Virus record (IMG/VR): IMGVR_UViG_3300043446_004613
Coordinates: 124,001-188,000 of that record
Direction: 5' to 3' (one strand)
DNA length: 64,000 nt
Shown: in pieces, positions 3,484-62,597 of the stretch
How the letters are laid out: each line of letters begins with the position of its first letter
Numbering within the stretch: position 1 is the stretch's first letter
Notes under the pieces: model-generated
Database searches by the model: none
Told to the model about the DNA's origin: nothing
What the model saw: only the letters and a program-made list of their open reading frames with translations
Made by a program: the position numbers and the translations under genes

Positions 3484-5178
3484 ATGCGTTGTTACGTACG
3501 CAGAATTTCTTGTATGCGACAATACCTTATTGAAGGCATAACGGGCGCGTTTCCGTTCATTGTGGATCGGAACAAAACTCCGGTAACGGAGAGTCGCCCC
3601 AACGGCGGTAGCTTCACCCGCATCCCCGGACGTTTCAGCGTTTGCGACTGTGTCAACGGCAACAATCGCCGTTACAGCAAGCGTGTCTGGGAAAAGAACC
3701 TCACTGAAGGCTCAGTCCTACAGGAGTCCATCAAGCGCAACGCTGCTTTCGGCCTCCTCGAACACCCCAAAGACGGTATTGTCACTCTTCTCTCTCCGAT
3801 TTCCCACCACGTTACCAAAGCAGAAATGGTTGAAACCCGCGATGCCTCCGGCAAGCCGGTTTATGAAGTCTGCGGCGAAATCGTCATTTTCAATACCGAT
3901 GAAGGCCGCAAGTTGACCGCTTTGATCGAAGGCGGCTACAACCCGCTCGTCTCCAGCCGTGGTTACGGCTCTCTGAACAAAGCCAGCGACGGTGTTGATG
4001 AAGTCGCTGAGGACTTTGTCTGCGAAGGTTGGGACGTGGTAATCAAGCCGAGCTTTGAGCAGGCTGAACTGACTCCGGCCCGCAGTACTTCTACGGCCAC
4101 TATGGCCACCCCCGTCGCTCCTAACCCGCAAGCTGAATCTAAACAGCCTGCGCCCGCTACAGTGACGGAAACCAAACAAAATTTGAAGGAGTCGACGCCT
4201 TCAACTGGTGCGGATAAACCGACCAGCGTAACCACAAACAAAAATAACACTATGGAACTGAACACATTGAAGTCGCAGATCGAGAGCCTCCGCTCCGCTG
4301 ATGCTGCGAAACCCAATCGGTTCGCTGAGTCCATGACGAAAGTCGAGGAACTGCACCAGCAGGTTGCTGAGTGGGCCGCTGCCGATCCCAAACGTTCTTG
4401 GGAAGCGCAGAAGCTCCACAAGTCCCTCGACTCCATCGGCGAAGGACTCACTGCGACCATTAACCGTCCCGCTGACACCGCTCGTAAGCTCAGCGAGAAC
4501 AACAACAAGCTGCTTCGCGTTATCGACGCCGTCGCCAAGACTGCCGTCACTTACAAGAAGAAGCTCGGCGAAGCCCTCAAATCCGACGGCAGCCGCGTCA
4601 AGATGATCGAAGAACTGACCCGTCGCGGTCAGGGCTGGCAGCGTATCGCCGAGAGCCGTAAGCAAAAGCTCATGGTTCAGGAAAAAGATTTCGATACCGC
4701 GTGCGAAGCGCTCGACATCATGGCCCAGCGCTATCACGAAGACGTGACCGAACTCGGTCGTCGCCTCATCGTCCTTGAATTCAAGGAGAAGGCCCAGACG
4801 CCTGAAATCCAGAAGTCGCTCAAAGAAGCGACCCGTCTGCGTCACATCGTTACCATCCGCGAACGGCTGGAAGGTAAAAAGAAACCCGTCTCTGAAACCT
4901 CTGCGGAAGGCAAGCAGCCCAAAGAAGGCGAGCAGCCTAGCCACGAAGGCATCAAGGACGAGAAGCAAAAGGGCGCTGGCAGCCCTGATGCTGGCAAGGT
5001 TGCTGAAGAACCCGGCAAGGTGAAAACCGAGTCGAAGGCTCCCGGCGACGCGGCCAAAAAGACTCAGACCGTTTCTGAGTCACAGGTGCTGAAGACGGAT
5101 CGCGCTGACATCAGTGTCCGCTCGGTCAATGAATCGGTGGAACTGGTGCGTCGGCTTAGCACCGCACCCGCCAAGTAA
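3484..5178 (+). CDS. prohead core protease (T4 gp21-like) fused to a coiled-coil scaffold region
   Basis: NGNNRRY, GLLEHP, VSSRGYGS and GWDVVIKPSF motifs of the gp21/U9 family, followed by about 300 aa of charged helical sequence; directly upstream of the MCP; likely start 3514. Confidence 0.88.
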   Translation: MRCYVRRISCMRQYLIEGITGAFPFIVDRNKTPVTESRPNGGSFTRIPGRFSVCDCVNGNNRRYSKRVWEKNLTEGSVLQESIKRNAAFGLLEHPKDGIVTLLSPISHHVTKAEMVETRDASGKPVYEVCGEIVIFNTDEGRKLTALIEGGYNPLVSSRGYGSLNKASDGVDEVAEDFVCEGWDVVIKPSFEQAELTPARSTSTATMATPVAPNPQAESKQPAPATVTETKQNLKESTPSTGADKPTSVTTNKNNTMELNTLKSQIESLRSADAAKPNRFAESMTKVEELHQQVAEWAAADPKRSWEAQKLHKSLDSIGEGLTATINRPADTARKLSENNNKLLRVIDAVAKTAVTYKKKLGEALKSDGSRVKMIEELTRRGQGWQRIAESRKQKLMVQEKDFDTACEALDIMAQRYHEDVTELGRRLIVLEFKEKAQTPEIQKSLKEATRLRHIVTIRERLEGKKKPVSETSAEGKQPKEGEQPSHEGIKDEKQKGAGSPDAGKVAEEPGKVKTESKAPGDAAKKTQTVSESQVLKTDRADISVRSVNESVELVRRLSTAPAK

Positions 5179-5215
5179 CAAGTAAGCCATCCAACAACAA
5201 AACTAACGAACTACT

Positions 5216-6679
5216 ATGGTAATTCTCACTGAAAGTGGAAGACCGGTATTGGCGTCTGATGGCGGGCACATCTCCCGTTTCATGGACGTCTTGGAGTGGG
5301 GCTATCGCCTCGCTGAAACATCGTTGGGCATCCCTGAAAAGAACTCACGCGGCCTTTGGGAAGCGCGGGGCTGGAAGGAATTTGTCCAACACATGCCTGA
5401 GCACAAGCGTCCTTTGGCCGCAATCATGCTCGAAAACTGCCGCAGCCGTTTTGGCCGCCTCGATGAAGTGACTCGTACCACGTCACTCGGCACGTTCGAT
5501 AAATGGATTTTCCCCATTATCGCCAACATGTCCGAGAACGACGTGATCGACCAGCTTGTCGCGCTCCAGCCGATGGCAGGCCCGGTGAGCCAGATCGTCT
5601 ACATGGACATCGTCACTGGCCGTCGCAAAGGCCGTACTCCCGCAGGTGCCCCGATGTGGCGTGCCTTGCAGGGCGCGGTTGACCGCGACGACGACGGCGA
5701 TGAAGTCGTTCAGGACGAAACCGGCACTGCGTCGAGCGGTGGCGTGTTCATCCTCGAATGGACGCCTATCCGTCCCGGTACCGTCACAGGTTCCTACAGC
5801 ACCGTGAACTTTGCTGACGACGGCAACGGTCAGATCATCAACGTAGCCACCAACGCCGCGATCGGTACAGTCGTGTACCAAGGCACTGGCGCTGGCACCG
5901 TGACGATCGCCGGGGCAGCCAACACGGACTACTCCGTGACCTACGCGTTCAATTCTGAAGGCAACCTCGCCATTCAGGATTACGAAATGAAGCTTTCCAG
6001 CACTCCGGTGACTGCGAAAGTGATGAAGCTCAAGACCCTGTGGTCTGAGGAAGCCGACCAGAACCTTCAGGCGATGTACAACATCAAGGCCGAAAGCGTT
6101 CTGCTCAACGCGCTCACCAACGCCCTCCAGTATCAGAAACACCGCCAAGTGATCTTCGATCTCCGCGCCAAAGCTGATGCCGGTTTCGTTGTCTGGGATG
6201 CGATCGCTCCGTCTGGTGTCAACTACCAGACCCACAAGTTCAGCATCATCGACGCGTTCGAGACTGCATCGAACTTCATCTACGGCGCTACGAACATGGT
6301 TGCCGGTAACTGGTTGCTGCTTGGCCTCCAAGCCGCTACCGTGGTTGCCACGCTGCCGCAGTTCGTGCCGAAGAACAACCGCGTGCAGATGCAGGGTATC
6401 ACCTACATCGGCGATCTTGGCAACAAGAAGGTCTTCGCTGACCCGCACTATCCGACTAACGAGTTCCTCGTCGGTCACAAGGGTGACCAGTTCCTGACCA
6501 CCGGCTACGTGTTGGCCGAATATCAGAAGCTGTACACCACCCCTGACGTGGTGCTGCCGGACTTCATCCATCAACGTGGCTTTGCGACGAGCTTCGCCCG
6601 GAAGATGGTTAACAGCAAGATGTACTGCCGTGGCCTCGTTCAGAATAGTCCAACGGCGTTCGGCCAAACGATTGGCTAA
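5216..6679 (+). CDS. major capsid protein (T4 gp23-like)
   Basis: DQLVALQPMAGPVSQIVYM motif, KLKTLWSEEADQNLQAMYNI segment, strongly biased codons, position after protease/scaffold, own terminator. Confidence 0.92.
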   Translation: MVILTESGRPVLASDGGHISRFMDVLEWGYRLAETSLGIPEKNSRGLWEARGWKEFVQHMPEHKRPLAAIMLENCRSRFGRLDEVTRTTSLGTFDKWIFPIIANMSENDVIDQLVALQPMAGPVSQIVYMDIVTGRRKGRTPAGAPMWRALQGAVDRDDDGDEVVQDETGTASSGGVFILEWTPIRPGTVTGSYSTVNFADDGNGQIINVATNAAIGTVVYQGTGAGTVTIAGAANTDYSVTYAFNSEGNLAIQDYEMKLSSTPVTAKVMKLKTLWSEEADQNLQAMYNIKAESVLLNALTNALQYQKHRQVIFDLRAKADAGFVVWDAIAPSGVNYQTHKFSIIDAFETASNFIYGATNMVAGNWLLLGLQAATVVATLPQFVPKNNRVQMQGITYIGDLGNKKVFADPHYPTNEFLVGHKGDQFLTTGYVLAEYQKLYTTPDVVLPDFIHQRGFATSFARKMVNSKMYCRGLVQNSPTAFGQTIG

Positions 6680-6698
6680 GAGTAAGCTGAAAATTCAT

Positions 6699-6727
6699 AA
6701 ACCCCGCAGGAAACTGCGGGGTTTTTT
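6699..6727 (+). terminator. Rho-independent terminator of the MCP gene
   Basis: aaaccccgcag-GAAA-ctgcggggttt hairpin followed by a T tract, 20 nt after the MCP stop. Confidence 0.9.
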
Positions 6728-6856
6728 GTTGCTTTATTTTGCTAACTAGCTAAAAGTAAGCTGGTGCAGGCAGGTAAGCTCAAGCTTGACCAGTTTCGGG
6801 AATATGTGAAGCGTGCGCTGACAACCAAGCTGTAGATAGTTACATAAAATATAATG

Positions 6857-6884
6857 TTGACTTTCAGCGCCGGGCGCTTACTCT
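6857..6884 (+). promoter_or_regulatory. sigma70-like promoter, probably giving a leaderless transcript
   Basis: TTGACT-N16-TACTCT, with the -10 box ending 6 nt before ATG 6891. Confidence 0.45.
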
Positions 6885-6890
6885 TACACC

Positions 6891-7268
6891 ATGCTATTTG
6901 AACCGACGGCCACCAACATCACCAAGCGCTACTTTGTAGACCGCGATGGCGTGCCGACATCCCGGATGCAGAACCGGCCCGGCATGGGCCACTTTGAGAT
7001 CGCGCAGTCTGTTGTAAATCTTGATCCGAATACTGATCTGTACCAGCAGATGTTTGCTTTGAAATACCTGCGCGTAGGCGAAGATGCGGCGAGCAATACG
7101 CTGTACGTCGACGCTCCTGTCAGCAGCGCGGATAAGCTCACTACGCGTCAACGGCGCTGGCTAAAGGACAAACAAGCGGAAGGCTGGAAAGTCGAGTTCA
7201 ACAATCGCTCGTTTGTTGAGGCCCGCGACACCCGCGCCACGCAGGTTGTAAAGCAGCTGCTCGGGTAG
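6891..7268 (+). CDS. hypothetical protein
   Basis: 125 aa, ends in ATQVVKQLLG motif. Confidence 0.6.
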   Translation: MLFEPTATNITKRYFVDRDGVPTSRMQNRPGMGHFEIAQSVVNLDPNTDLYQQMFALKYLRVGEDAASNTLYVDAPVSSADKLTTRQRRWLKDKQAEGWKVEFNNRSFVEARDTRATQVVKQLLG

Positions 7269-7275
7269 TTAGACT

Positions 7276-7518
7276 ATGCTGCATAAACGTGCCAATCAAA
7301 TCCGTACCCGGATCACGCAAATTGAACGTGAATTAGACAACGACCACGATGGTCAGCCTACCGCGCCGCTGACTCGCGAACTCGAAGACCTGCGTAACGA
7401 ACTCGCTTTCATTGAGGCCGACATCCCGCGTCGCACAAATGGTCGTTTTTTGGAAGGCCAGAACCCGCATAATACGACTCCTGCTGGGGCGCTGGTTTCC
7501 AAGATGCTTGATGCCTGA
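7276..7518 (+). CDS. hypothetical protein
   Basis: 80 aa, short coiled coil, ends GALVSKMLDA; GTAGTTA upstream. Confidence 0.55.
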   Translation: MLHKRANQIRTRITQIERELDNDHDGQPTAPLTRELEDLRNELAFIEADIPRRTNGRFLEGQNPHNTTPAGALVSKMLDA

Positions 7519-7523
7519 ATGAT

Positions 7524-8027
7524 ATGCTCTCCGCCGCTTTCATTGTAAACCGCCTGCTTGAAACCAGCGTCAATGACCATGTTCTGGTAAAAAGCAAAGG
7601 CTTGGTGCTGCTTAAAATGTCCATGATTGCGCAGTACTTGCTTGATAAGAATCGTTACCCTGATCTGCCTGAAGCTGCCGTGCAGGCTGAAATCAAAAGT
7701 GCCCGTTTGACGGCGGCTCAAGTCGACAACATTCTGGATGACGACGACGAAAAAGCGGAACGATCCGAAGCCAAAGCAGACGGTACAATCGATCAGTACT
7801 GGCAATCCAAGTGTGAAGATATTGCTGATAGCGTTGCTAACGACATTCGCAGAAGTGCCGGAATTAAAGAACCGACGTGGCAACAATGGAAGCAGGGCAA
7901 CGCTCACTATTTTAAGACTCCGTCCGGTGAAATCCTCACCGCGCAAACCGCAGAAGAGTACTGGGCAATTCAGGCCAGAATCGGAAAACAACGCGTTACT
8001 TTATGCTCTCCGCCGCTTTCATTGTAA
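7524..8027 (+). CDS. hypothetical protein
   Basis: 167 aa starting MLSAAFIVNRLLE. Confidence 0.6.
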   Translation: MLSAAFIVNRLLETSVNDHVLVKSKGLVLLKMSMIAQYLLDKNRYPDLPEAAVQAEIKSARLTAAQVDNILDDDDEKAERSEAKADGTIDQYWQSKCEDIADSVANDIRRSAGIKEPTWQQWKQGNAHYFKTPSGEILTAQTAEEYWAIQARIGKQRVTLCSPPLSL

Positions 8028-8042
8028 AGCGCCTGCTCGAAA
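7524..8042 (+). repeat. 40-bp direct repeat (7524-7563 and 8003-8042) encoding the N-termini of two adjacent genes
   Basis: atgctctccgccgctttcattgtaaa(c/g)cgcctgct(t/c)gaaa, 2 mismatches. Confidence 0.9.
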
Positions 8043-8500
8043 ACGACGATGATGACATCGGTCGCTATATCGACGCAGCAGCCCACCAGCTACGCTACGG
8101 CGCAAAGATGCTGGCAACACAACCGACATCTGCTGATCCTGTAACGTATACGCATTTTGATTGCTGGTCTGACACAGGCGACGACGAAGATGATGGCGGC
8201 GAAGTTTGGAACTGGGACAGCGATCAAGCCGTAGCTCAGGTAGGTGTGCTGTGCGACGAATGGGTGACCATACCCGGCGTTGATGCGGATAAAATTCGAC
8301 AGATACAGCGCAATTATCTAGCACTGGGTATCGAAGGGCCTGCCGACTATGGTTGTCCCGGACAGGCCGATGCGTTCAACGAGTTTGCTAAAGTTTTTAT
8401 TGAAGCTGGCTACAGTGTCTACCTAAGTGACAGCATGTTTGAAGTTTACGATCCCGAAGAATTATCGGAAGAGGACAACGTATCGGATGATGAGCTATGA
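8003..8500 (+). CDS. acidic hypothetical protein
   Basis: 165 aa starting MLSAAFIVKRLLE. Confidence 0.6.
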   Translation: MLSAAFIVKRLLENDDDDIGRYIDAAAHQLRYGAKMLATQPTSADPVTYTHFDCWSDTGDDEDDGGEVWNWDSDQAVAQVGVLCDEWVTIPGVDADKIRQIQRNYLALGIEGPADYGCPGQADAFNEFAKVFIEAGYSVYLSDSMFEVYDPEELSEEDNVSDDEL

Positions 8501-8904
8501 GCGGCTGCAACCAACCATCAGCTTTACCCGGAAGCCAGCGCACTGTTCCATGTGGAACAAGTGTAGACGGTCGCATCTTCCTATGCTCCAACTGCCACAT
8601 GAGCGAGTCCGGCCCGCGTAAAGCCAGCCGAATCGTAGAATCTCTCTTGGAGGATGAAGGTGAACTTAACGCGCAAAGCTACGTCGATGAATTACCTCGC
8701 ATCATCGACGACTGGCATGATCTTGCCGGTGATGACTGGATGGAATGGATGGAGATAGTGCGTGAGATCGATGGCGACCTGCCTGAAGAAGAACAGATGA
8801 CCAGCAAGGAAGCCGATCGGCTGGCTGGCCAGATTTATCGGGCGCACAACGGTGAACTACAGGCAGCGCGGGCAGCTTTTGGATTGGAAACCGGTGCCAG
8901 CTAA
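8497..8904 (+). CDS. hypothetical protein
   Basis: 135 aa, ATGA overlap with upstream gene, contains ASRIVESLLE. Confidence 0.55.
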   Translation: MSGCNQPSALPGSQRTVPCGTSVDGRIFLCSNCHMSESGPRKASRIVESLLEDEGELNAQSYVDELPRIIDDWHDLAGDDWMEWMEIVREIDGDLPEEEQMTSKEADRLAGQIYRAHNGELQAARAAFGLETGAS

Positions 8905-8938
8905 GCATGTGATTAGATCACGTGCTAGTAGTTAGAGC

Positions 8939-9157
8939 ATGAACGCTACAATTCGTAAAGTCATCGGCGAGATGCAAGAGCCGCACCCGGAAACGGATAT
9001 GTCTAACCCCGAGGAAAAGCGTGAGGTCGTGCTGGCCCGTAAGATCAAGCACTGCATTGGCGCACGTAAGGGCACCGCCGAAGATTACCGGGAAGCTCTC
9101 AAGCAGGCCGAGCGTTACGCTGACGAAATTATCACGATGCACGGACAGCAGCCTTGA
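8939..9157 (+). CDS. hypothetical protein
   Basis: 72 aa, TIRKVIGE N-terminus, GTAGTTA 4 nt upstream. Confidence 0.55.
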   Translation: MNATIRKVIGEMQEPHPETDMSNPEEKREVVLARKIKHCIGARKGTAEDYREALKQAERYADEIITMHGQQP

Positions 9158-9161
9158 TTCG

Positions 9162-9821
9162 ATGCCACAGTCCAAAGCCCATAGCGTAGTTTCGCACCTG
9201 CTTGAAGCGATGGAGGTTCGGCTGGACGGTTACGATTACCCGGTGGCTGTATACTTGATTGATCTGAAGGATAAGCAGACCGTCAAAAGCGGGTACGCTT
9301 ATTTCTCCCGGCCCTACCGTGACTGGCCGATCCCGGAGTCTTTCACGTACTTGATCGGCACAGAGAAACCTGCCCGGAAGTCCATCGCGATCCAAGCGAT
9401 TATCAACTTTGTAGACGGCCCGGCGACTGCTGCCAAGGTTACCGACGTGGACGAAGACTATAAGGCGTTTCTGCGTGACTATTACAAGCCATCGCAGCTG
9501 GACGACTACAAGTACTTTTCCAACTGTGCGCTGCAATGGGCGAAGCAGAACAAAATCATGCGTCCGGGGTACATAATGCAAGACGAACTGGACAGTTACA
9601 CGTACCCTATTCCAGAGCTACAGGCGCTTGTCAAATGGAGTTCTGACAACTGGCGCATGTCCGACCACTTTGGTTTGTTCCAAGGCAACTCTGGCGCTAC
9701 CCATGTCAGACTCACGCTCTACATCAGTGTAGACTACGCCGGTATACCGGACGAGCCGGATGCCGAAGCAGTCGAACGGTTGCTTCCTTACTTGGGGAAT
9801 GAAGGAGGGCGCAATGGCTGA
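9162..9821 (+). CDS. hypothetical protein
   Basis: in-frame ATG of ORF 9021-9821 just after the upstream stop; AHSVVSHLLE motif. Confidence 0.6.
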   Translation: MPQSKAHSVVSHLLEAMEVRLDGYDYPVAVYLIDLKDKQTVKSGYAYFSRPYRDWPIPESFTYLIGTEKPARKSIAIQAIINFVDGPATAAKVTDVDEDYKAFLRDYYKPSQLDDYKYFSNCALQWAKQNKIMRPGYIMQDELDSYTYPIPELQALVKWSSDNWRMSDHFGLFQGNSGATHVRLTLYISVDYAGIPDEPDAEAVERLLPYLGNEGGRNG

Positions 9822-10068
9822 ATTCACTCCTTGGCAGTTGACGCGCCGTCCCGAAGTAACCACACGAAAGAAAGAGGTTTTTGCGCGTGATCTCTACAAC
9901 TTTAGCGGACGCAGTGAGACGCAAGGCGCAAATAACCCGAAGGTAGGTATCCCAAGCATGGGGCCGCACGCTGCCGGGGCTATCCCGCCAACCAAGTATC
10001 CGACAGTAGTTGCCACCGAAGTTATCACCACCGGCACGCTGGGCACGGAATACGGAAACAATTTATGA
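9814..10068 (+). CDS. small hypothetical protein whose 3' end is duplicated at 11324-11404
   Basis: GGAGG SD before ATG 9814; the second copy differs only at synonymous sites, showing the frame is coding. Confidence 0.7.
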   Translation: MAEFTPWQLTRRPEVTTRKKEVFARDLYNFSGRSETQGANNPKVGIPSMGPHAAGAIPPTKYPTVVATEVITTGTLGTEYGNNL

Positions 10069-10145
10069 GTATAAGCGCACACAGGCTTGTCGACATGCTG
10101 GATAAGATTAGAGCCGATGAAGCCAGCGCCGCCTGTGATCAATAA
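10065..10145 (+). pseudogene. 5' stub of a phage gene interrupted by the rml insert
   Basis: ATGA-coupled start, MSISAHRLVDMLD motif like neighbouring phage proteins, then runs into antisense rmlB sequence and stops. Confidence 0.55.
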
Positions 10146-10151
10146 ATTCAT
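10090..10151 (-). pseudogene. rmlB: 5' fragment of dTDP-glucose 4,6-dehydratase
   Basis: MNLLITGGAGFIGSNLIQH is the RmlB Rossmann start; similarity ends after about 20 codons. Confidence 0.8.
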
Positions 10152-10166
10152 AGTGACAGTTGAAGA

Positions 10167-11114
10167 TTATTCCGGCTTCCAGTTTTTCAACGAGTGTTCG
10201 AGCGCTTCTTCTACGCTACGAACTTTGATACCTGTAGATTTCAATTTAGAAACATCCATGATGCAATTGGAGCGCGGCGTCTTAGCGGCGACTTTGTAAA
10301 ACTCATCGTCATTCGCCCAGAACTCAAATTTCCGCGCGGGCTTCAGGTGCTTTTCAATGAGTGCTACAACGTGCCGCGTGGTGACATAGCCTTCATTGGT
10401 GAGGTTGTAAACGCCGAACGGGGCGCGGCGTTCCCATAAATCCAGACAGATGCTCGCGAACTCGGCGCGGTGCGAAATGGAATTTACGTTTTCGTAAGCC
10501 TTCACATAACGCTGCACTTTGCTCAAGTAATTGCGTTTATTGTCAAATTCATCGAACGGAATCCGCAATCGCCAGACGTAGCTCTGACCAATACCTGCCA
10601 TCGCTTCCTCACCCAGCGCCTTGGTGCCGCTATAAAAACTACACGGCTGGTCGCGAAAGGAAAAATTCGGAGTATCGTTTTCGGTGAAACCGAAAATAGA
10701 GGAGGATTTCTGCTCAGCCAAAGCATGCAGGTACGACTTAGTCATATCCTTCTCCACACGCATCTTTCCGTTCTCCAAAATTTTGGCTCCGCTGTAGATG
10801 CAACCAGAAGAGACGTGTCCCCACGGAATTCCCGCCGCCGCACACGCGTGAGCGATGGTCTGGGGTAGCAGCGTATTCCCGACCAGCGTGCCAGCCTTGT
10901 CCAACTCGCAGGCATCCACATTCGGTTTTCCGGTGTAACCCGCGCAGTTAGCCACAAACTCTGGCTTTTTGGCTCGCAAAAATTCCAGCAATAAATCAAA
11001 GCGGGAATAATCCACCTGACTACGCGAAAGGGTGATGAACTCTTTTTTACGACGGCGTAATTCCGTAACGAATGCTTCGCCGATATAGCCAGTGGCTCCG
11101 AGAAGTAGAATCAT
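10167..11114 (-). CDS. rmlD: NAD(P)-dependent nucleotide-sugar epimerase/reductase (RmlD family, NRS/ER-like)
   Basis: GATGYIG, CAGYTGKPNVDACE, HVSSGCIY and FYSGTK (YxxxK) motifs; lies between rmlA and rmlB fragments. Confidence 0.85.
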   Translation of the reverse strand: MILLLGATGYIGEAFVTELRRRKKEFITLSRSQVDYSRFDLLLEFLRAKKPEFVANCAGYTGKPNVDACELDKAGTLVGNTLLPQTIAHACAAAGIPWGHVSSGCIYSGAKILENGKMRVEKDMTKSYLHALAEQKSSSIFGFTENDTPNFSFRDQPCSFYSGTKALGEEAMAGIGQSYVWRLRIPFDEFDNKRNYLSKVQRYVKAYENVNSISHRAEFASICLDLWERRAPFGVYNLTNEGYVTTRHVVALIEKHLKPARKFEFWANDDEFYKVAAKTPRSNCIMDVSKLKSTGIKVRSVEEALEHSLKNWKPE

Positions 11115-11120
11115 TTTTTT

Positions 11121-11322
11121 TTATTGCAGACGTTTGGCTTCGGCGATGACCTCTGTTTCCAGATAAGCGCGATATTCGCAATTTGGCATCAGGCTTACGA
11201 TTTTTTTCTAACTGAGTCAGCGTAACGATACCCGAGCGGAACGCTGCTTCTTCGGGACAGCCAATCTTGATGCCCGCGCGTTTTTCAATCGTCTGCACAT
11301 ACGCGCTCGCATCATGCAGGCT
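11121..11322 (-). pseudogene. rmlA: 3' fragment of glucose-1-phosphate thymidylyltransferase with a +1 frameshift
   Basis: SLHDASAYVQTIEKRAGIKIGCPEEAAF matches the RmlA C-terminus; removing one A from the 7-nt run near 11201-11207 restores LEKIVSLMPNCEYRAYLE...KRLQ*. Confidence 0.85.
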
Positions 11323-11449
11323 ACCGCCAACCAAATACCCAACAGTGGTCGCTACGGAAGTAATCACCACCGGCACGCTGGGAACCGAATACGGAAATAA
11401 TTTAAGATGAACTGCACATGCCTCAACCTTGGTGTGTAGTTATAGTGCT

Positions 11450-11680
11450 ATGAACGTAAACTATAATCCAAACGCTCGCTACGACATGGGTGCTAATGCC
11501 GCAGGCTGTGACCGTGTGTCGAATCAAAGCACACTGAACTCAGGCAGCGCCAAAGGGCTGGCCAGTGACAATGCACTATCCAGCGCGAACTTGCGTGCTG
11601 GTTTTAGTGCTGCTGGTAATCAGCGCACCAACAGCGGCCCCAACGTGGCCGGTGCTCCGCGCAGTATCAACGGCACCTAG
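11450..11680 (+). CDS. small Asn/Gly/Ala/Ser-rich hypothetical protein
   Basis: ATG 7 nt after GTAGTTA, biased codons. Confidence 0.5.
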   Translation: MNVNYNPNARYDMGANAAGCDRVSNQSTLNSGSAKGLASDNALSSANLRAGFSAAGNQRTNSGPNVAGAPRSINGT

Positions 11681-11877
11681 GTGTCGCTCAGCAGTCTTTT
11701 CTTGATGCGGTCGCAACGAGAACGTAGCCCGTCCATTACGTCGGGCCACTTCTCGTCTTCCGCTACTTCTGCGGTCAGATCGAAGCGCACGTTCTCGAAG
11801 TTACCGGTGTTCACTGTCAGCCCGTAGCTGACGCGGACAACTTTACCGGGAATTTTCTTTTTGGGCTGCGCTTCCAT
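11677..11877 (-). CDS. hypothetical protein
   Basis: 66 aa from ATG 11877; VSYGLTVNTGNFENVRFD resembles small phage proteins. Confidence 0.5.
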   Translation of the reverse strand: MEAQPKKKIPGKVVRVSYGLTVNTGNFENVRFDLTAEVAEDEKWPDVMDGLRSRCDRIKKRLLSDT

Positions 11878-11881
11878 ACAC

Positions 11882-12565
11882 TTAACGATGGCACCAAACA
11901 CTTTTACCTAGTAAGCGTACGTGAGGACTGTGTAAAAGACGGCAATAGCAGGCAGTACGTGTTATCTTATCGCCAGTTTTTTCAGTCCACGCTGTTAGTA
12001 CTTCTTTAGTACTGATACGTGGCTTTACGCTAATAGTTGCGAGCACAAAGTCATCAAAAGCAGCCGTACTGGCTGTCTTCCAATGCCTGCGCTGTTTAGT
12101 CACAAGTGCCGACTTATCATCCGCACTAGCTGGTTTAAGGCCGTTAATCGCACGAGTATACTCATCAATTTGGCTAGTGAGTTCTGCGATTTCGTTTATT
12201 AGCTTAGCCTTGGTAACATTGATTGATTCCAACTGCGCATTTTTGCGTTTAAGCGTAGATTCCGCTGTTGTGATACGTATCGAAAGTTCATCTTTAAGTG
12301 ACATAGCTTTTTGAATTTGCGCCGAAGGTTTAGTTAAAAACACGTGGGCGCTTTGAAGAATAGTGGACTTGGAGATGGTATCAGCCGTAAAGCCGCTATC
12401 CGCCAAGCTTTCGGTTAAATTGACGATGTCAGAAGAAACGTCTACAGTCGTGCGATCTGGCCGCAGTATTCCGACTAGAACCTGCGAAAGCTTTTGACGC
12501 AATGACGGGTCTTTTTCAACCACATCGCGCACCTTGATGTAAAATCTGAAGGATACTCTTTGCAT
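11882..12565 (-). CDS. hypothetical protein with coiled coil and possible C-terminal winged HTH
   Basis: C-terminal 227 aa of ORF 11882-12748; AT-rich; the upstream part overlaps the DUF932 gene and is ignored. Confidence 0.55.
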   Translation of the reverse strand: MQRVSFRFYIKVRDVVEKDPSLRQKLSQVLVGILRPDRTTVDVSSDIVNLTESLADSGFTADTISKSTILQSAHVFLTKPSAQIQKAMSLKDELSIRITTAESTLKRKNAQLESINVTKAKLINEIAELTSQIDEYTRAINGLKPASADDKSALVTKQRRHWKTASTAAFDDFVLATISVKPRISTKEVLTAWTEKTGDKITRTACYCRLLHSPHVRLLGKSVWCHR

Positions 12566-12576
12566 AAGATTTAGAT

Positions 12577-12602
12577 AGGGGCTGACCCGAAGGCCAGCCC
12601 CT
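12577..12602 (-). terminator. stable hairpin (terminator or mRNA stabiliser) after the DUF932 gene
   Basis: aggggctggcc-TTCG-ggtcagcccct on the minus strand, C(UUCG)G loop, weak U tract. Confidence 0.55.
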
Positions 12603-12608
12603 GTGATT

Positions 12609-13733
12609 TTAGTTGCGCAAAAAGTCCGATGGCGGCAGTTCCATGATCTTTCCACCCAAGCGTTCAATGTCCACAGCGCGGTCGTAGCTGGGCACATCTT
12701 CTGCCAAACGGGTAACTGCGTTGACCAAGCCGTACTGGCTGAAGTCACCGCCCTGTGCGAAATGCAGGAGCATGTTGGCTTTTTCCTGTTCGATCAGGTC
12801 AAAACGATCGGCAACGGCTTCCACGACCTTGCTCACGTCCGTGGCGTCTTTAGCCAGTTGAACGTTCTGCAACTTGCGCAGCCGTTCGATGTTTTCGTTG
12901 AACTTGATCTGATCGAGTGCGCCGGAAACAACGTCACTAACTTTGGCCCAGAAAGCTTTGTCATCGAGCTTGCGTGTTTCGTCGCTGAACAGTTCAGAGG
13001 TGTTTTCGTCGCCCCAGATTTCACCCTCGTTACGGCGACCGACATGGTGACGCTTGAGGGTACGCTGCAAGATAAGGCCGTTGGTGCAGACCAAATCGTG
13101 CATGATCGGATCGACAAAAATTGAACCGTTGCCTGTTTCAGAATTACCGATGATGACCCCGGCTTCGACGGTGCGCTGGATACGGTTGTGGGTGCCGATC
13201 TTCACATTCTGGTCGATGATGGCTTGGATGCGTGGGGTTGAAGCTTGGATATAGAAACGCTTCTCAGTGATCTCAGCGCTGCGGATAATGCAGCCTGCTT
13301 CCTTGAGCTTGGGCATGACAGCAGCGAAAAGGTCGAAGTTGTCGAGAATACGGTAACGGTCGCTCAGGAAGGCGCGAGCGATCTTGTGGCCGTTGCAGAG
13401 GGTGCGCAACATCCGGCGTTCCGGCTTGGAGGCGAACCAGTGGTTTACGTTGCGGCAGAGAAGCTCAGGAGCTTCGGTGCGCATGCGTTCGGCATACTTT
13501 GCCGGAATACCGACGCGGGCGGCGATTTGCTCAAGGCACTGTACAGTGGGCTTGAACACTTGTTGTTGCTGATTGACGGTAAACTGAAGGCCCACATCGG
13601 GGGTACCTTCGGACTCTGGTGGTTCGACTACCGTCATGCTCAGGGCACTGGTGTCAGCGACGAAATCCCGTTTGGTACGGTTCTCCTCAAGGATTTGCTG
13701 GCTGAGGTCTTGCAGTGAACGTCCTGCTTTCAT
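12609..13733 (-). CDS. DUF932 family protein
   Basis: RAFLSDRYRILDN, NSETGNGS and LVCTNGLI motifs typical of DUF932. Confidence 0.75.
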   Translation of the reverse strand: MKAGRSLQDLSQQILEENRTKRDFVADTSALSMTVVEPPESEGTPDVGLQFTVNQQQQVFKPTVQCLEQIAARVGIPAKYAERMRTEAPELLCRNVNHWFASKPERRMLRTLCNGHKIARAFLSDRYRILDNFDLFAAVMPKLKEAGCIIRSAEITEKRFYIQASTPRIQAIIDQNVKIGTHNRIQRTVEAGVIIGNSETGNGSIFVDPIMHDLVCTNGLILQRTLKRHHVGRRNEGEIWGDENTSELFSDETRKLDDKAFWAKVSDVVSGALDQIKFNENIERLRKLQNVQLAKDATDVSKVVEAVADRFDLIEQEKANMLLHFAQGGDFSQYGLVNAVTRLAEDVPSYDRAVDIERLGGKIMELPPSDFLRN

Positions 13734-29614: not shown

Positions 29615-30012
29615 AAATTGACGTATACAGCGAAGCGGTACTTCGGGTGCTCCCCGAAGTACCTGATCTCCCTCTGGAGGCACCGCCTGCGGAGGGCTTC
29701 GATCTTGTCGATGTCTGCATCTGTCCGGCCTGCGGCGGCCAAGACGCCGCTGTGAAGAAAGTGGAGGATGCGGAAGTTGCTAAATGCCCACAGTGCCAGT
29801 GTGAATTCTCGCCACGCTTGGAAGCTGTATCGGCGCAAGTCATTCGCCGTATTGGTGAGCACCGTGCCCGGCGCATGAGCCGCTTCCTTGAGTCATTGCC
29901 GTTGAATCCACCGCCGGGTGTAAATCCAAAAGATTACTCACTTTTCCGTAAAATCGTCGATACTGAGCCTTTGGCTGTTGAAAACCCTGAATCCGAACTT
30001 GAAAATGAATAA
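29611..30012 (+). CDS. zinc-ribbon protein
   Basis: CPACG...CPQCQ pairs. Confidence 0.55.
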   Translation: MKIDVYSEAVLRVLPEVPDLPLEAPPAEGFDLVDVCICPACGGQDAAVKKVEDAEVAKCPQCQCEFSPRLEAVSAQVIRRIGEHRARRMSRFLESLPLNPPPGVNPKDYSLFRKIVDTEPLAVENPESELENE

Positions 30013-30781
30013 ACTTATCGAAGCTGCTGTTGTTGAACCGCAGTACAGCAAAACAGAGCGTGAATTTGATCCTCGTCATCTCATGAGCAAGCTAGATGCT
30101 ATACATCGCCGCTTTGTAGATGAGCGCGTAGCTGGCTTTACGACTCCTGAAGGTGTCACTCACCCACCCTGTTCACGTGAAGAGGCTGAAGCTCGTTGGG
30201 CTAAAGCGGAGCAGGCCTTTATGAACGCGCTTTCAGGAAACGTTGCACCTGAGCACCGTGAAAACAGTAAAAGTTTGCAGCATAAGCTGGGACTTACCCG
30301 GCCTAAGTTAACAGGCGCGATTTACCGCGATGATCCAACCGTTCCAGACACGGAACCAGAAACTGACTGGGAAAGCTACGAAAAATCGTGGCATAAGCAG
30401 GAAAGTAACGTGAGCGCTGTCGTGCGTACGCTTGTAACCGAAGCGATCGATATGCCTACGCCCGAGTGGGAAATAGATAAACATTTTTTTGATCAGGCAC
30501 TGCACAGTATCCGCAGCCGCTTTGTAGATGAGCGCGTATCTGGTTTTATGACGCCTGACGGTGTCAAACATCCGCCGGTTTCGCGTGAAGAGGCGGAAGC
30601 TCGTTGGGCTAAAGCAGAGAATGTTTTCAAAAAAGCGCTTATGAATCCATCGCCAAAAGCGGCGAAAAGCTTGAAACTTGGACGTAAACTCAGCCCGTAC
30701 GAGCGCGGCATGCGCGATGAGCCTTCGCTACGTCGCGGCGAGTCAAAATCCAGTTCTATCGTGCGGAAGATGATTTCTTGA
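30005..30781 (+). CDS. internal-repeat hypothetical protein
   Basis: two copies of RFVDERVxGFxTPxGVxHPPxSREEAEARWAKAE. Confidence 0.65.
   Translation: MNKLIEAAVVEPQYSKTEREFDPRHLMSKLDAIHRRFVDERVAGFTTPEGVTHPPCSREEAEARWAKAEQAFMNALSGNVAPEHRENSKSLQHKLGLTRPKLTGAIYRDDPTVPDTEPETDWESYEKSWHKQESNVSAVVRTLVTEAIDMPTPEWEIDKHFFDQALHSIRSRFVDERVSGFMTPDGVKHPPVSREEAEARWAKAENVFKKALMNPSPKAAKSLKLGRKLSPYERGMRDEPSLRRGESKSSSIVRKMIS
30110..30618 (+). repeat. about 100-bp intragenic direct repeat (30110-30210 and 30518-30618)
   Basis: same-frame repeat, period 408 nt. Confidence 0.85.
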
Positions 30782-61326: not shown

Positions 61327-62463
61327 ATGAATCTGATCACATTCAATGACCCGATCACAATCGCCTTCAAGAAAAGCGCCGGTGGCGTCACTCAAACCTT
61401 TGAAGCCAACCGTCCATACCTGATCGCCAATGCGCAGATTGAGCGCATCATGCGCGATCAACAAGTCAGCGGACGCGCTTACAAAATCAGCCGCGCCGAC
61501 ACACGTATTCCGAACGCGCATAAAGCCGCTTTCAACCGTAATGACAGCGTTCTGATCTACAACGGCAGCGGCGGCTACGGCGACCAGATTTTGACTTGGC
61601 CGGTGGCGCGTTATCTTGCCAATCAGGGTTTGAAAGTCCACGTCTTAACTGACCCCGGCAACAACGTATGCTGGTGGGGATTTGACTTCGTCAAGACGGT
61701 GAACACGATTCCGTTGCTTTGGGAGACTGTTCAGCTATATGACCACTTCATCCACTGGGAGGCGGTGGTTAACATGGACGAGCATCAGGATCAGGAGCAT
61801 CCGATTGACATGATGTTCCGCAAGATAGGCTACGATCCGGCGGATATTTCGGCTGAGGACAAGTGCGTGCGCCCTGTGTTTACGCCAAGTGAACTAGGCA
61901 CCTTGAACAAATACGTGACTTCCGGCAAGCGCGTCGGTCTTTACCAGCTATCCAGTGCCAATCCAGTGCGCTGCCTGCCTGCGGCGGACAGCGTGTTCTT
62001 GATCATGAAGATTGCTGAAGCCTATCCTGACATTCACTGGCTCTGCCTGCATGACGAGTTTGTGCCCAAGGAGTACAAAGAGACACTGGCTGTTGAAATT
62101 ACCAAGCGCGGTTTTACGAATGTGGAAGGTTTTACGGCTCCTAATCTGCGCGAACTGTGGGCGCTGACAGAGCACGTGAATGTGGTTATCAGCCCTGACA
62201 GCATGATGGCCCACATCGCCGGAGCTTTCGGTACTCCCTGCGTAGGTCTTTGGGGGCCGATGTCACCGGAAAGTCGGATGAAATACTACAAGAACCACCA
62301 CCCGATCTACCATCGCGAGTTCTGCCCGCACAGCCCCTGCTTTGTATACAGTAACACATTCCCGAAATATTGTCCGCCTCGCGCAAATCGCAATGTCTGC
62401 GACGTTATGGCCGGTATTTCGCCTTCGGAAGTGATTAGCGCTATCGGTCACATCTGTAGATAG
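61327..62463 (+). CDS. glycosyltransferase family 9 (heptosyltransferase-like)
   Basis: GGYGDQILTWP and VISPDSMMAHIAGAFGTPCVGLWGP signature. Confidence 0.85.
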   Translation: MNLITFNDPITIAFKKSAGGVTQTFEANRPYLIANAQIERIMRDQQVSGRAYKISRADTRIPNAHKAAFNRNDSVLIYNGSGGYGDQILTWPVARYLANQGLKVHVLTDPGNNVCWWGFDFVKTVNTIPLLWETVQLYDHFIHWEAVVNMDEHQDQEHPIDMMFRKIGYDPADISAEDKCVRPVFTPSELGTLNKYVTSGKRVGLYQLSSANPVRCLPAADSVFLIMKIAEAYPDIHWLCLHDEFVPKEYKETLAVEITKRGFTNVEGFTAPNLRELWALTEHVNVVISPDSMMAHIAGAFGTPCVGLWGPMSPESRMKYYKNHHPIYHREFCPHSPCFVYSNTFPKYCPPRANRNVCDVMAGISPSEVISAIGHICR

Positions 62464-62597
62464 TTCATGAACGATGAACCGATAAATACTGAGTATATTG
62501 ATCCCGAGGCTGAACGCTATCGGTCACATCTGTAGATAGTTCATGAACGATGAACCGTTAAATCCTGAGCATCTTGATCCCGAAGCTGAACGCTATC
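62439..62597 (+). repeat. 76-bp tandem duplication bounded by CGCTATC
   Basis: CGCTATC at 62439, 62515 and 62591; first 43 nt identical, 5 substitutions in the remainder. Confidence 0.92.

What the first reader, a model, noticed from the sequence alone, without database searches (positions are those of the whole stretch)
9985..11404. Insert flanked by two alleles of the same 27 codons that differ only at synonymous sites
Seen: 11 differences in 81 bp, all third-position synonymous, yet the second copy has no start and cannot now be under coding selection. It therefore comes from a recently functional, diverged allele. The sequence after each copy differs. Model (inference): DNA from a related phage carrying gene end + next-gene stub + host fragment entered by homologous recombination on the left and by a short GGCTA-type microhomology at about 11319-11323 on the right, stranding the resident gene end. 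The alternative is a chimeric assembly of two strains plus host reads.
Basis: partly seen in the sequence, partly recalled or inferred. Interest (0 to 1): 0.75.

Follow-up and report, generated by a model that had tools for sequence, protein, structure and literature searches.

The report
Fresh host-DNA capture scar in phage
An uncultivated freshwater jumbo phage has recently taken up 1.2 kb of a Verrucomicrobia (Limisphaerales-like) rhamnose operon between two small genes, and the join left a second, synonymously diverged copy of the last 27 codons of the upstream gene: a clear but ordinary example of how phages gain host DNA.

Summary
Window 9985-10068 and 11324-11407 are an 84-nt direct repeat with 12 differences. 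Eleven are third-position synonymous changes in 27 codons (P about 1e-6). The twelfth changes the stop codon (TGA versus AGA).

The window lies in a 211-kb metagenome-assembled phage, 3 kb downstream of its capsid gene. In 9 of 11 relatives gene A (9814-10068) is followed directly by gene B (11450-11680).

The insert 10092-11322 is one contiguous bacterial segment on the minus strand:
- the last ~66 codons of rmlA, with a +1 frameshift;
- an intact 315-aa NRS/ER-like epimerase/reductase gene, 94% aa identical to a Limisphaerales MAG;
- the first 20 codons of rmlB.

Only 22 nt (10069-10090) remain unassigned.

Contigs assembled separately from two runs of the same sample cross both junctions, which argues against an assembly chimera. 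Neither the stranded copy nor the rmlA remnant shows decay, so the event is recent.

Best model: an illegitimate join of host DNA between two diverged copies of gene A's end, most likely from two related phages. A lost tandem paralogue is the main rival. No close relative of either allele is in any database, so donor and direction stay unresolved. This is a known kind of event with an unusually legible scar.

The parts
9814..10068 (+). Gene A, 84 aa, small conserved phage protein of unknown function; intact, with a GGAGG ribosome-binding site upstream
   Evidence: ORF list. Homologues at 54-67% aa in 34 metagenomic proteins and 13 related loci. No Pfam or PHROG family.
9985..10068 (+). Repeat copy 1: the last 27 codons of gene A plus the TGA stop; the copy in use
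10069..10091 (.). Left junction: about 22 nt of unassigned sequence between the gene A stop and the first base alignable to bacterial rmlB (10091/10092). Either filler or the start of the donor genome's post-gene-A sequence
   Evidence: blastn end points, alignment A2. No source found in the phage genome or in 175 fetched loci.
10092..11322 (-). One contiguous captured bacterial segment (1231 nt), colinear with the rmlA - NRS/ER-like - rmlB operon of Verrucomicrobiota (Limisphaerales-like)
   Evidence: Single blastn alignments of 1227-1232 nt at 74-77% identity to L097, L098 and L100; 80-81% to L096 and L006. Gene order in bacterial contigs. Organism names.
10092..10151 (-). 5' stub of dTDP-glucose 4,6-dehydratase (rmlB): the first 20 codons, including the GGAGFIGS Rossmann motif
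   Evidence: Translation and alignment. 100% aa identity over residues 1-20 of the L009 RmlB. The L009 protein scores above the TIGR01181 cut-off.
10167..11114 (-). Intact 315-aa NRS/ER-like sugar-nucleotide 3,5-epimerase/4-reductase (RmlD_sub_bind fold); antisense to genes A and B
   Evidence: Pfam PF04321/PF01370. Best solved structure 4qqr '3,5-epimerase/4-reductase', E 5.6e-29. 94% aa to a Limisphaerales MAG, 92% to P0001. No deviations at 206 columns conserved in >=97% of sequences.
11121..11322 (-). 3' remnant of glucose-1-phosphate thymidylyltransferase (rmlA), about the last 66 codons plus stop. A +1 frameshift comes from an extra base in the T7 run at 11201-11207 (A7 on the coding strand)
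   Evidence: Translations, alignment A1. tblastn to L009 RmlA residues 227-292. No deviations at 36 conserved columns.
11323..11323 (.). Right junction: bacterial homology ends at 11322 and the repeat starts at 11324. The single A at 11323 cannot be assigned to either side
11324..11410 (+). Repeat copy 2: stranded last 27 codons of a gene A copy, then AGA and TGA. No gene body upstream. It keeps its native link to the spacer and gene B
   Evidence: A 46-aa ORF (11270-11410) fuses 19 antisense-rmlA codons to it in frame. There is no evidence that this ORF is used.
11450..11680 (+). Gene B, 76 aa, the normal downstream neighbour of gene A in relatives
   Evidence: tblastn in 10 related loci, placed 32-68 nt after gene A in 9 of them. 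Homologues at up to 72% aa.

Best explanation
This is the scar of a single, recent, illegitimate recombination event in the variable region downstream of the capsid gene of a freshwater jumbo phage. A 1231-nt piece of the host chromosome became joined between two phage DNA ends that overlapped by 84 nt. The host was a Limisphaerales-like verrucomicrobium. The piece runs from inside rmlA, through an intact NRS/ER-like epimerase/reductase gene, to codon 20 of rmlB.

The left end ran through the complete gene A plus about 22 nt. The right end began 27 codons before the stop of gene A and continued into gene B. The two phage ends came from two copies of gene A's 3' end that had each been evolving as working coding sequence (dS about 0.8, dN 0). 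These were most likely two related phages meeting in one cell. This could have been a donor/recipient cross with one homologous and one illegitimate crossover (homology-facilitated illegitimate recombination), or two broken genomes bridged by a host fragment.

Only products that kept gene A whole and gene B with its native upstream 127 nt would be viable. That would explain why the joins lie where they do.

Shown: the repeat, the bacterial origin and colinearity of the insert, its absence from relatives, its physical reality in two runs, and the lack of decay. Inferred: two genomes as the source of the two copies, one event rather than several, and the selective filter. The captured enzyme gene may be neutral cargo or a usable auxiliary gene. 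Nothing here shows that it is expressed.
For: - Repeat and synonymous-only pattern: (P about 1e-6).
- Phage identity: a 211-kb virus record, with head protease and major head protein at 3484-6679.
- Ancestral state: gene A is followed directly by gene B in 9 of 11 relatives.
- Bacterial origin: more than 8000 bacterial homologues, best 92-94% aa. The best viral homologue is only 65%.
- Colinearity: the same rmlA - 315-aa gene - rmlB order occurs in bacterial contigs. Single colinear alignments span 11322 to 10092. Both end genes are truncated.
- No other rml gene or gene A paralogue exists in the phage genome.
- Physical reality: in run X1 one 87-kb contig (depth 23.7) spans 8200-13400 with no differences. 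In run X2 a 4.4-kb contig (depth 16.3) crosses the left junction and a 3.4-kb contig (depth 16.9) crosses the right. No joint skips the insert, and no contig at 99% identity continues the host genes.
- Recency: no nonsynonymous-site differences at 59 sites in copy 2, none at 36 conserved columns of the dead rmlA remnant, and none at 206 conserved columns of the intact gene. By my Poisson bound on copy 2's 59 nonsynonymous sites alone, copy 2 has been neutral for less than about 6% of the divergence path.
- Variable site: the A|B boundary carries other inserts in L014 and L176 and a gene B duplication in L003. The capsid-to-gene-A interval shares no genes with relatives whose capsid protein is 89-100% identical.
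- Precedent: phage recombinases recombine sequences up to 22% diverged (PMC2327257). One-sided-homology integration is documented in bacteria (PMC3240628).
Against: - No relative close enough to carry either allele exists in any collection searched. Gene A relatives reach 67% aa at most and gene B relatives 72%. The two-genome origin, the donor and the direction are therefore inferred, not observed.
- The copies differ at 41% of their codons. Relatives that differ at 8-14 of these 27 residues show 36-62% at their identical-residue codons. On a simple clock, a lineage that far away should show several amino-acid changes, and none is seen. By my rough estimate P is 0.002-0.07. This fits episodic protein change but is not explained.
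- The 22-nt left filler has no identified source.
- Microhomology at the right junction is at most a few bases and is ambiguous.
- Depth evidence is contig-level only. In run X2 the short contigs inside the insert have depths of 6.3-7.8, against 16-17 in the flanks. This could mean a mixed population or just low local coverage.
- The two runs come from one sample, so they are not fully independent.
Confidence: 0.6

Rival explanations
1. Tandem-paralogue remnant within one lineage. The ancestor carried two adjacent gene A copies (A1-A2-B), both functional and long diverged at synonymous sites. One break-repair event replaced the A1-A2 spacer and the first 57 codons of A2 with host DNA.
For: Tandem paralogues occur in this genome (genome 69003-70247 and 70249-71202). 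They also occur in this gene neighbourhood in relatives: an A-like gene upstream of A shares its start and end at 82-87% nt in L003, and gene B is duplicated in L003. The model needs only one genome and one event. It fits the lack of any sampled second lineage.
Against: None of 11-13 relatives has two gene A copies of this kind. The A-like upstream paralogue of relatives is absent here. Two tandem copies kept 27/27 identical in protein at dS about 0.8 would need strong selection on both. Redundant duplicates rarely experience that.
Confidence: 0.2
2. Assembly chimera: reads of two phage strains and a bacterium were wrongly joined.
For: The record is a metagenome assembly. All evidence comes from one sample. 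Short contigs inside the insert in run X2 have lower depth.
Against: Both junctions are reproduced with no differences in contigs assembled separately from two runs, at the depth of the phage flanks. No alternative path, insert-skipping joint or high-identity host continuation is seen. The copies share at most 20 identical bases, fewer than the 31-mer used, so the repeat cannot confuse the graph. Bacterial homologues in the sample are under 95% identical to the insert. A chimera would also need two separate false joins that happen to leave gene A and gene B intact.
Confidence: 0.04
3. Site-specific insertion of an element that carries its own replacement 3' end of the target gene. Prophage 21 and e14 do this in E. 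coli icd, displacing the resident end to the far side (recalled from the literature, not tested here).
For: The architecture is the same: the gene is completed by the first copy, then the insert, then a displaced copy that differs mainly at synonymous sites. There is a 20-nt identical core-like run in the middle of the repeat.
Against: The insert has no integrase or any mobility gene. It is a raw operon fragment with both end genes truncated. Bacterial homology abuts copy 2 directly. No other copy of the element was found in viral collections.
Confidence: 0.04
4. In-situ duplication (target-site-like or slipped) followed by divergence of the two copies in place.
For: Direct repeats flanking an insert are what such events leave.
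Against: A non-coding copy would change at all codon positions. Instead 11 of 11 differences are synonymous (P about 1e-6). The equally non-functional rmlA remnant next to it shows no substitutions at conserved sites. So there was no time for 14% divergence in place.
Confidence: 0.01
5. Copy 2 is still translated, as the C-terminus of a new 46-aa ORF (11270-11410). Its first 19 codons are antisense rmlA and resemble a lipoprotein signal ending in LASC. Its codons would then still be under selection.
For: The ORF exists, has an ATG and is in frame with copy 2. This would explain the perfect protein conservation.
Against: There is no ribosome-binding site or promoter-like signal (sequence). The N-terminal part is a by-product of a conserved bacterial gene read backwards. 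Recency alone explains the lack of decay.
Confidence: 0.05

Closest known systems
Moron / auxiliary host-gene acquisition by illegitimate recombination in tailed-phage mosaicism (the model of Hendrix and colleagues, recalled from the literature)
   Same: Host-derived DNA sits at a gene boundary in a variable region, is absent from relatives, and has joints that leave the neighbouring phage genes intact.
   Different: The raw scar is still visible here: truncated host genes at both ends, 22 nt of filler and an 84-nt overlap. No promoter or terminator of its own was detected. The gene is antisense to its neighbours.
Homology-facilitated illegitimate recombination (PMC3240628 and the work on competent bacteria cited there)
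   Same: It predicts exactly this outcome: a homologous anchor on one side, an illegitimate join on the other, and foreign DNA carried in with a duplication or deletion at the join.
   Different: It was described for chromosomal uptake of linear DNA in bacteria. Here the recipient would be a phage genome. The anchor crossover cannot be located because no parental sequence is known.
Homeologous recombination between diverged phage sequences by phage recombinases (lambda Red; PMC2327257)
   Same: It involves related phage sequences 14-22% diverged. It also implies that the two 86% identical copies could still recombine and delete the insert.
   Different: That work concerns in-register exchange. 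Here the partners are out of register by the length of the insert.
Prophage 21 / e14 insertion in E. coli icd, with an element-borne replacement 3' end and a displaced resident end (recalled from the literature)
   Same: A gene is completed by one copy of its 3' end, and a second copy that differs mostly at synonymous sites is stranded on the far side of the insert.
   Different: There is no integrase, no att core shown and no mobile element. The cargo is a truncated operon fragment.
NRS/ER-type bifunctional NDP-4-keto-6-deoxyglucose 3,5-epimerase/4-reductase (Arabidopsis 4qqr; mimivirus UDP-L-rhamnose synthase 7jid)
   Same: These are the best solved-structure matches of the captured 315-aa protein. 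In bacteria the gene sits between rmlA and rmlB with no rmlC listed between them in the contigs seen. That fits a three-gene rhamnose route.
   Different: Activity and nucleotide specificity are untested. The protein scores below the RmlD equivalog cut-off (84.9 versus 224). The phage carries neither partner enzyme.

Membership tests
Host-derived moron / auxiliary gene in a phage | The sequence is of cellular origin and closer to cellular than to viral homologues | tested here: met
   92-94% aa to bacterial proteins and a Limisphaerales MAG. The best viral-contig homologue is 65%. The segment is colinear with the bacterial operon, including non-coding spacers.
Host-derived moron / auxiliary gene in a phage | Present in this phage but absent at the same locus in relatives | tested here: met
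   Gene A is directly followed by gene B in 9 of 11 relatives. None carries rml sequence.
Host-derived moron / auxiliary gene in a phage | Own promoter and terminator (classical moron definition) | tested here: not met
   The consensus scan finds no sigma-70-like promoter for the minus-strand gene and only weak terminator-like hairpins. Verrucomicrobial promoters may not fit that consensus.
Host-derived moron / auxiliary gene in a phage | The gene is expressed and useful to the phage | not testable with these tools
   The ORF is intact with no deviations at conserved columns. The dead rmlA remnant is equally undecayed, so intactness does not show selection. No RNA run holds the sequence.
Homology-facilitated illegitimate recombination product | One junction formed by homologous crossover with a related donor | not testable with these tools
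   No parental or near-parental sequence is available.
Homology-facilitated illegitimate recombination product | The other junction lies at a short microhomology | tested here: inconclusive
   GGCT at 11319-11322 is bacterial and also occurs before copy 1, but 2 nt out of register. The base at 11323 is unassigned.
Transposon or insertion-sequence insertion with target-site duplication | Transposase, terminal inverted repeats, and a short identical target duplication | tested here: not met
   No transposase domain. No terminal inverted repeats at the insert ends. The repeat is 84 nt and only 86% identical.
Integrative element with a replacement 3' gene end (icd / e14 type) | Imperfect direct repeats of the target gene's 3' end flank the insert, and the first copy completes the gene | tested here: met
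Integrative element with a replacement 3' gene end (icd / e14 type) | Integrase or recombinase encoded in the element | tested here: not met
   The insert holds only the rmlA remnant, the NRS/ER-like gene and the rmlB stub.
RmlD (dTDP-4-dehydrorhamnose reductase) equivalog, TIGR01214 | Score above the curated cut-off | tested here: not met
   84.9 bits against a cut-off of 224. The best structural relative by sequence is the bifunctional 3,5-epimerase/4-reductase 4qqr.
Short-chain dehydrogenase/reductase, extended type | N-terminal GxxGxxG nucleotide-binding motif and catalytic YxxxK | tested here: met
   GATGYIG near the N-terminus and YSGTK are visible in the translation. Pfam Epimerase and RmlD_sub_bind domains.

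The most novel reading that the evidence does not exclude
The scar may not be a one-off. This phage lineage might gain genes routinely by out-of-register recombination between diverged genomes at gene termini. Three scars of that form occur in one genome:
- the one studied here;
- a 41-nt, 95% identical repeat forming the first 13 codons of two adjacent unrelated ORFs (7524 and 8003);
- a 45-nt, 89% identical repeat of a gene 3' end flanking 1.1 kb elsewhere in the genome.

In addition, the synonymous divergence between the two copies is unusually high for zero protein change. This might reflect selection acting on the repeats themselves, for example against recombinational loss of the insert or for continued translation of copy 2, rather than simple inheritance from two lineages.
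Probability: 0.12. Interest if true: 0.6.

Novelty: new member of a known kind. Interest (0 to 1): 0.38.

Why it matters
Phage mosaicism and host-gene capture are usually inferred from tidy end products. Here the untidied intermediate survives: both host genes at the ends are cut mid-frame, a short filler remains, and an 84-nt overlap is still readable codon by codon.

Three things follow:
- It dates the event as very recent.
- It shows that two coding copies of the same gene end took part in the join.
- It gives a sequence-based host assignment (Limisphaerales-like Verrucomicrobiota) for an uncultivated 211-kb freshwater phage.

It also marks the gene A | gene B boundary, and the capsid-to-gene-A interval, as a gene-gain hotspot in this phage family. 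It does not reveal a new kind of system.

Tried and rejected
- Phage GenBank collection, near and distant modes: no match to the locus.
- Degenerate 27-codon pattern in viral contigs: no match.
- Gene A in viral contigs, metagenome contigs and 5.8 billion proteins: nothing above 67% aa.
- Gene B: nothing above 72% aa. Its best relatives (L179, L180) carry neither allele.
- Source of the 22-nt filler: no approximate match in the phage genome or in 175 loci. The 10-13-mer hits are at chance level.
- Alignment of the filler to the spacer after copy 2, by eye: no convincing similarity.
- Codon-usage and GC3 comparison of the two copies with the phage's genes, to tell resident from intruder: uninformative. 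Summed log codon frequencies are -11.9 versus -13.8, and GC3 is 0.59 versus 0.52.
- Promoter and terminator scan: nothing that explains expression of the captured gene.
- Search for further rml genes or gene A paralogues in the phage: none.
- In-place divergence of a duplication: rejected.
- Transposon or integrase models: rejected for lack of any mobility gene.
- Other self-repeats in the genome: those at window 30108/30516 and genome 69133/70376 proved to be an intragenic domain repeat and ordinary tandem paralogues, not scars.
Full report
**Context.** The window is bases 124001-188000 of a 211,113-bp linear IMG/VR virus record, estimated 93% complete. It is a genuine tailed phage. ORFs at 3484-5178 and 5216-6679 match head maturation protease and major head protein families. 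The finding lies about 3 kb downstream of the capsid gene. The sequence occurs in two public runs of one freshwater metagenome sample and in no other run served.

**The observation.** The repeat finder reports a single direct-repeat family in 9000-12500: 9985-10068 and 11324-11407, 84 nt, 86% identical, 1339 nt apart.
- Copy 1 is the end of gene A (9814-10068, 84 aa), which has a strong GGAGG site upstream.
- The 27 codons of each copy encode the same peptide. They differ at 11 sites, all third positions and all synonymous (7 transitions, 4 transversions).
- The twelfth difference turns TGA into AGA, which is followed by TGA.
- Only 27% of possible single substitutions in this stretch are synonymous. 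The chance of 11 out of 11 is 6e-7 analytically and 2e-6 by simulation.
- pS is 0.50 and Jukes-Cantor dS is 0.82.
- The differences are also synonymous in the antisense frame that shares third positions. Conservation of gene A in relatives identifies the + strand as the selected one.

**What the insert is.** On the minus strand the DNA between the copies reads as three parts.
- *An rmlA remnant.* It covers the last ~66 codons of a glucose-1-phosphate thymidylyltransferase (11322 down to 11121). One extra base in a homopolymer run (11201-11207) shifts the frame.
- *An intact 315-aa ORF (11114-10167).* It has RmlD_sub_bind and Epimerase domains.
- *An rmlB stub.* After 15 nt come the first 20 codons of a dTDP-glucose 4,6-dehydratase (10151-10092), including GGAGFIGS.

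Bacterial contigs carry these three genes in this order. The flanking two score above the RmlA and RmlB equivalog cut-offs. Three Verrucomicrobia genome contigs align to the window in one piece from 11322 to 10092-10096, 1227-1232 nt at 74-77% identity. The closest, a Limisphaerales MAG, is 94% identical in protein and 80% in DNA. The best homologue on any viral contig is 65%. The phage has no other rml gene.

The insert is therefore one raw piece of a verrucomicrobial chromosome, cut inside a gene at each end. Only 10069-10090 (22 nt) is unassigned, and I found no source for it.

The 315-aa protein is closest, among solved structures, to the plant bifunctional 3,5-epimerase/4-reductase 4qqr (E 5.6e-29) and to a viral UDP-L-rhamnose synthase. 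It falls below the RmlD cut-off. That fits a three-gene rhamnose pathway in the donor bacteria.

**State in relatives.** I examined eleven distinct related loci, plus one contig for which only gene calls were available. Their capsid proteins are 89-100% identical to the window's, and capsid DNA is 84-86% identical with dS 0.7-1.5.
- In nine loci gene B starts 32-68 nt after gene A. The contig seen only as gene calls has the same order.
- Two carry other genes at this boundary: a 182-aa ORF plus a B-like gene in L014, and a 120-aa ORF in L176. Both start by overlapping gene A's stop.
- L003, counted among the nine, also carries a second gene B copy further downstream.
- None carries rml sequence.
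- The interval between the capsid gene and gene A shares no genes between the window and these relatives.

The locus therefore lies in a hyperplastic region, and the A|B boundary is a recurrent site of gene gain.

**Is it an assembly artefact?** Logan contigs are built run by run with 31-mers.
- In run X1 one 87,369-nt contig (depth 23.7) covers 8200-13400 with no differences.
- In run X2 a 4413-nt contig (depth 16.3) covers 8200-10666, and a 3389-nt contig (depth 16.9) covers 11114-13400. Each junction is therefore crossed independently.
- No joint skipping the insert was reported. No contig at 95% identity or more continues rmlA or rmlB beyond the joins. The bacterial homologues in the sample are under 95% identical.
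- The two copies share at most 20 identical bases, so they cannot tangle a 31-mer graph.

The chimera alternative is therefore unlikely. Three caveats remain. Depth is per contig, not per base. Both runs are from one sample. In run X2 the two short contigs inside the insert have depths of 7.8 and 6.3. That may be low local coverage, which is also where contigs break, or it may be heterogeneity.

**Timing.** Copy 2 has no differences at 59 nonsynonymous sites. The rmlA remnant cannot be functional. Yet it has no deviations at 36 columns conserved in at least 95% of 38 bacterial homologues, only the frameshift. The intact gene has no deviations at 206 columns conserved in at least 97% of 121 sequences. 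A Poisson bound on copy 2's 59 nonsynonymous sites alone puts its neutral time below about 0.05 substitutions per site. That is under about 6% of the synonymous path separating the copies. So the copies did not diverge in place. Copy 2 was working coding sequence until very recently, and the host DNA arrived very recently. Because the right junction joins host DNA directly to copy 2, one event is the simplest reading.

**Mechanism.** The product requires two phage ends that overlap by 84 nt. One ends just after gene A. The other starts 27 codons before gene A's stop. A host fragment lies between them.

The ends came from two copies that had evolved separately as coding sequence.
- *Most likely source: two related phages in one cell.* This could be a donor already carrying host DNA after gene A, integrated by one homologous and one illegitimate crossover. 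Such events are documented in bacteria (PMC3240628). Alternatively, two broken genomes were bridged by a host fragment. Phage recombinases tolerate this level of divergence (PMC2327257).
- *Main rival: a lost tandem paralogue (A1-A2-B).* Tandem paralogues exist in this genome and in this neighbourhood in relatives. However, no relative has two such gene A copies.

Which copy is resident cannot be decided. Codon usage does not discriminate, and no parental lineage is sampled. The claimed GGCTA microhomology is out of register by 2 nt, and its GGCT belongs to conserved bacterial codons.

**An unexplained detail.** The copies differ at 41% of their codons. The window's gene A differs from relatives at 36-62% of identical-residue codons in the same 27-codon stretch, and those relatives also differ at 8-14 of the 27 residues. 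Synonymous distance between the copies is thus not far below that to distant relatives, yet protein change is zero. Small numbers and saturation make this only mildly anomalous. It would fit episodic protein change tied to lineage-specific partners. I record it rather than explain it.

**Function of the captured gene.** It is intact and antisense to genes A and B. It has no detectable promoter and lacks its pathway partners in the phage. It may be neutral cargo that has not yet been lost. It may instead supplement the host's rhamnose pathway during infection. No RNA data exist.

**Verdict.** The anatomy needed correction, and the assembly alternative is largely excluded. This is a fresh example of a known process, host-DNA capture by illegitimate recombination in a phage hyperplastic region. 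Its scar is unusually readable, and it gives a useful host assignment.

Noticed in passing
window 7523-7563 and 8002-8042: A 41-nt direct repeat, 95% identical, forms the start codon and first 13 codons (MLSAAFIV[N/K]RLLE) of two adjacent ORFs (7524-8027 and 8003-8500). By eye the two ORFs look unrelated beyond that point; I did not align them. It looks like another recombination scar at a gene terminus.
   Followed up: partly
G000 genome 6874-6918 and 8005-8049 (outside the window, upstream): A 45-nt direct repeat, 89% identical and 1131 nt apart. One copy is the 3' end of a 91-aa minus-strand ORF. The other lies just upstream of a different ORF, with two ORFs in between. The differences are 3 nonsynonymous and 2 synonymous by hand translation, so this possible scar looks older or decayed.
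   Followed up: partly
window 6680-9813 compared with L002-L005, L012, L015, L177, L178: The capsid protein is 89-100% identical to relatives. None of the six ORFs between the capsid gene and gene A has a homologue in them, and the interval length varies from 0.65 to 3.6 kb. This is a hyperplastic region.
   Followed up: partly
L014:185-1210, L176:2755-3117, L003:5317-5854: Relatives carry different extra genes at the same gene A | gene B boundary: a 182-aa ORF plus a B-like gene, a 120-aa ORF, and a duplicated gene B. In L014 and L176 the extra gene starts by overlapping gene A's stop codon.
   Followed up: partly
window 10703-11122, run X2: The two short Logan contigs inside the insert have depths of 7.8 and 6.3, against 16.3 and 16.9 for the contigs that cross the junctions. 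No contig covers 10667-10702. This may be low local coverage or a mixed population.
   Followed up: no
window 11270-11410 (+): A 46-aa ORF fuses 19 codons of antisense rmlA (MPARFSIVCTYALASC, resembling a lipoprotein signal with an LASC lipobox) in frame to the stranded copy 2. It is probably a coincidence, and no ribosome-binding site is evident.
   Followed up: no
window 9894-10151 and 11047-11376 (-): The antisense frame of gene A's 3' end is open in both copies and encodes the same peptide (…VPVVITSVATTVGYLVGG). In the window it is fused in frame to the rmlB stub on one side and the rmlA remnant on the other. The same antisense frame is open in relatives L003 and L004. It is probably a by-product of shared third positions.
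   Followed up: partly
window 9950-9975, 11480-11500, 11640-11665; L014 76-94, 774-792, 894-912, 1251-1269: Genes A and B and their paralogues share a short GP[HN]AAG-type motif (for example MGPHAAGA and GPNVAGAP). It recurs as a nucleotide repeat in L014. The small proteins at this locus may form one repeat-containing family.
   Followed up: no
window 30108-30232 and 30516-30640: A 125-nt repeat, 82% identical, lies inside one ORF (29978-30781). It is an internal duplication of a ~40-aa segment (RFVDERV.GF.TP.GV.HPP.SREEAEARWAKAE).
   Followed up: partly
window 62439-62597; G000 genome 56691-56884: Two tandem arrays were seen in the self-comparison: period 76 nt (94% identical) near the end of the window, and period 84 nt (100% identical) upstream of the window.
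   Followed up: no
L179:1-2734: One relative has a gene B homologue (70% aa) with no gene A upstream. A UvrD-type helicase gene on the other strand lies there instead. Genes A and B are therefore not always linked.
   Followed up: no
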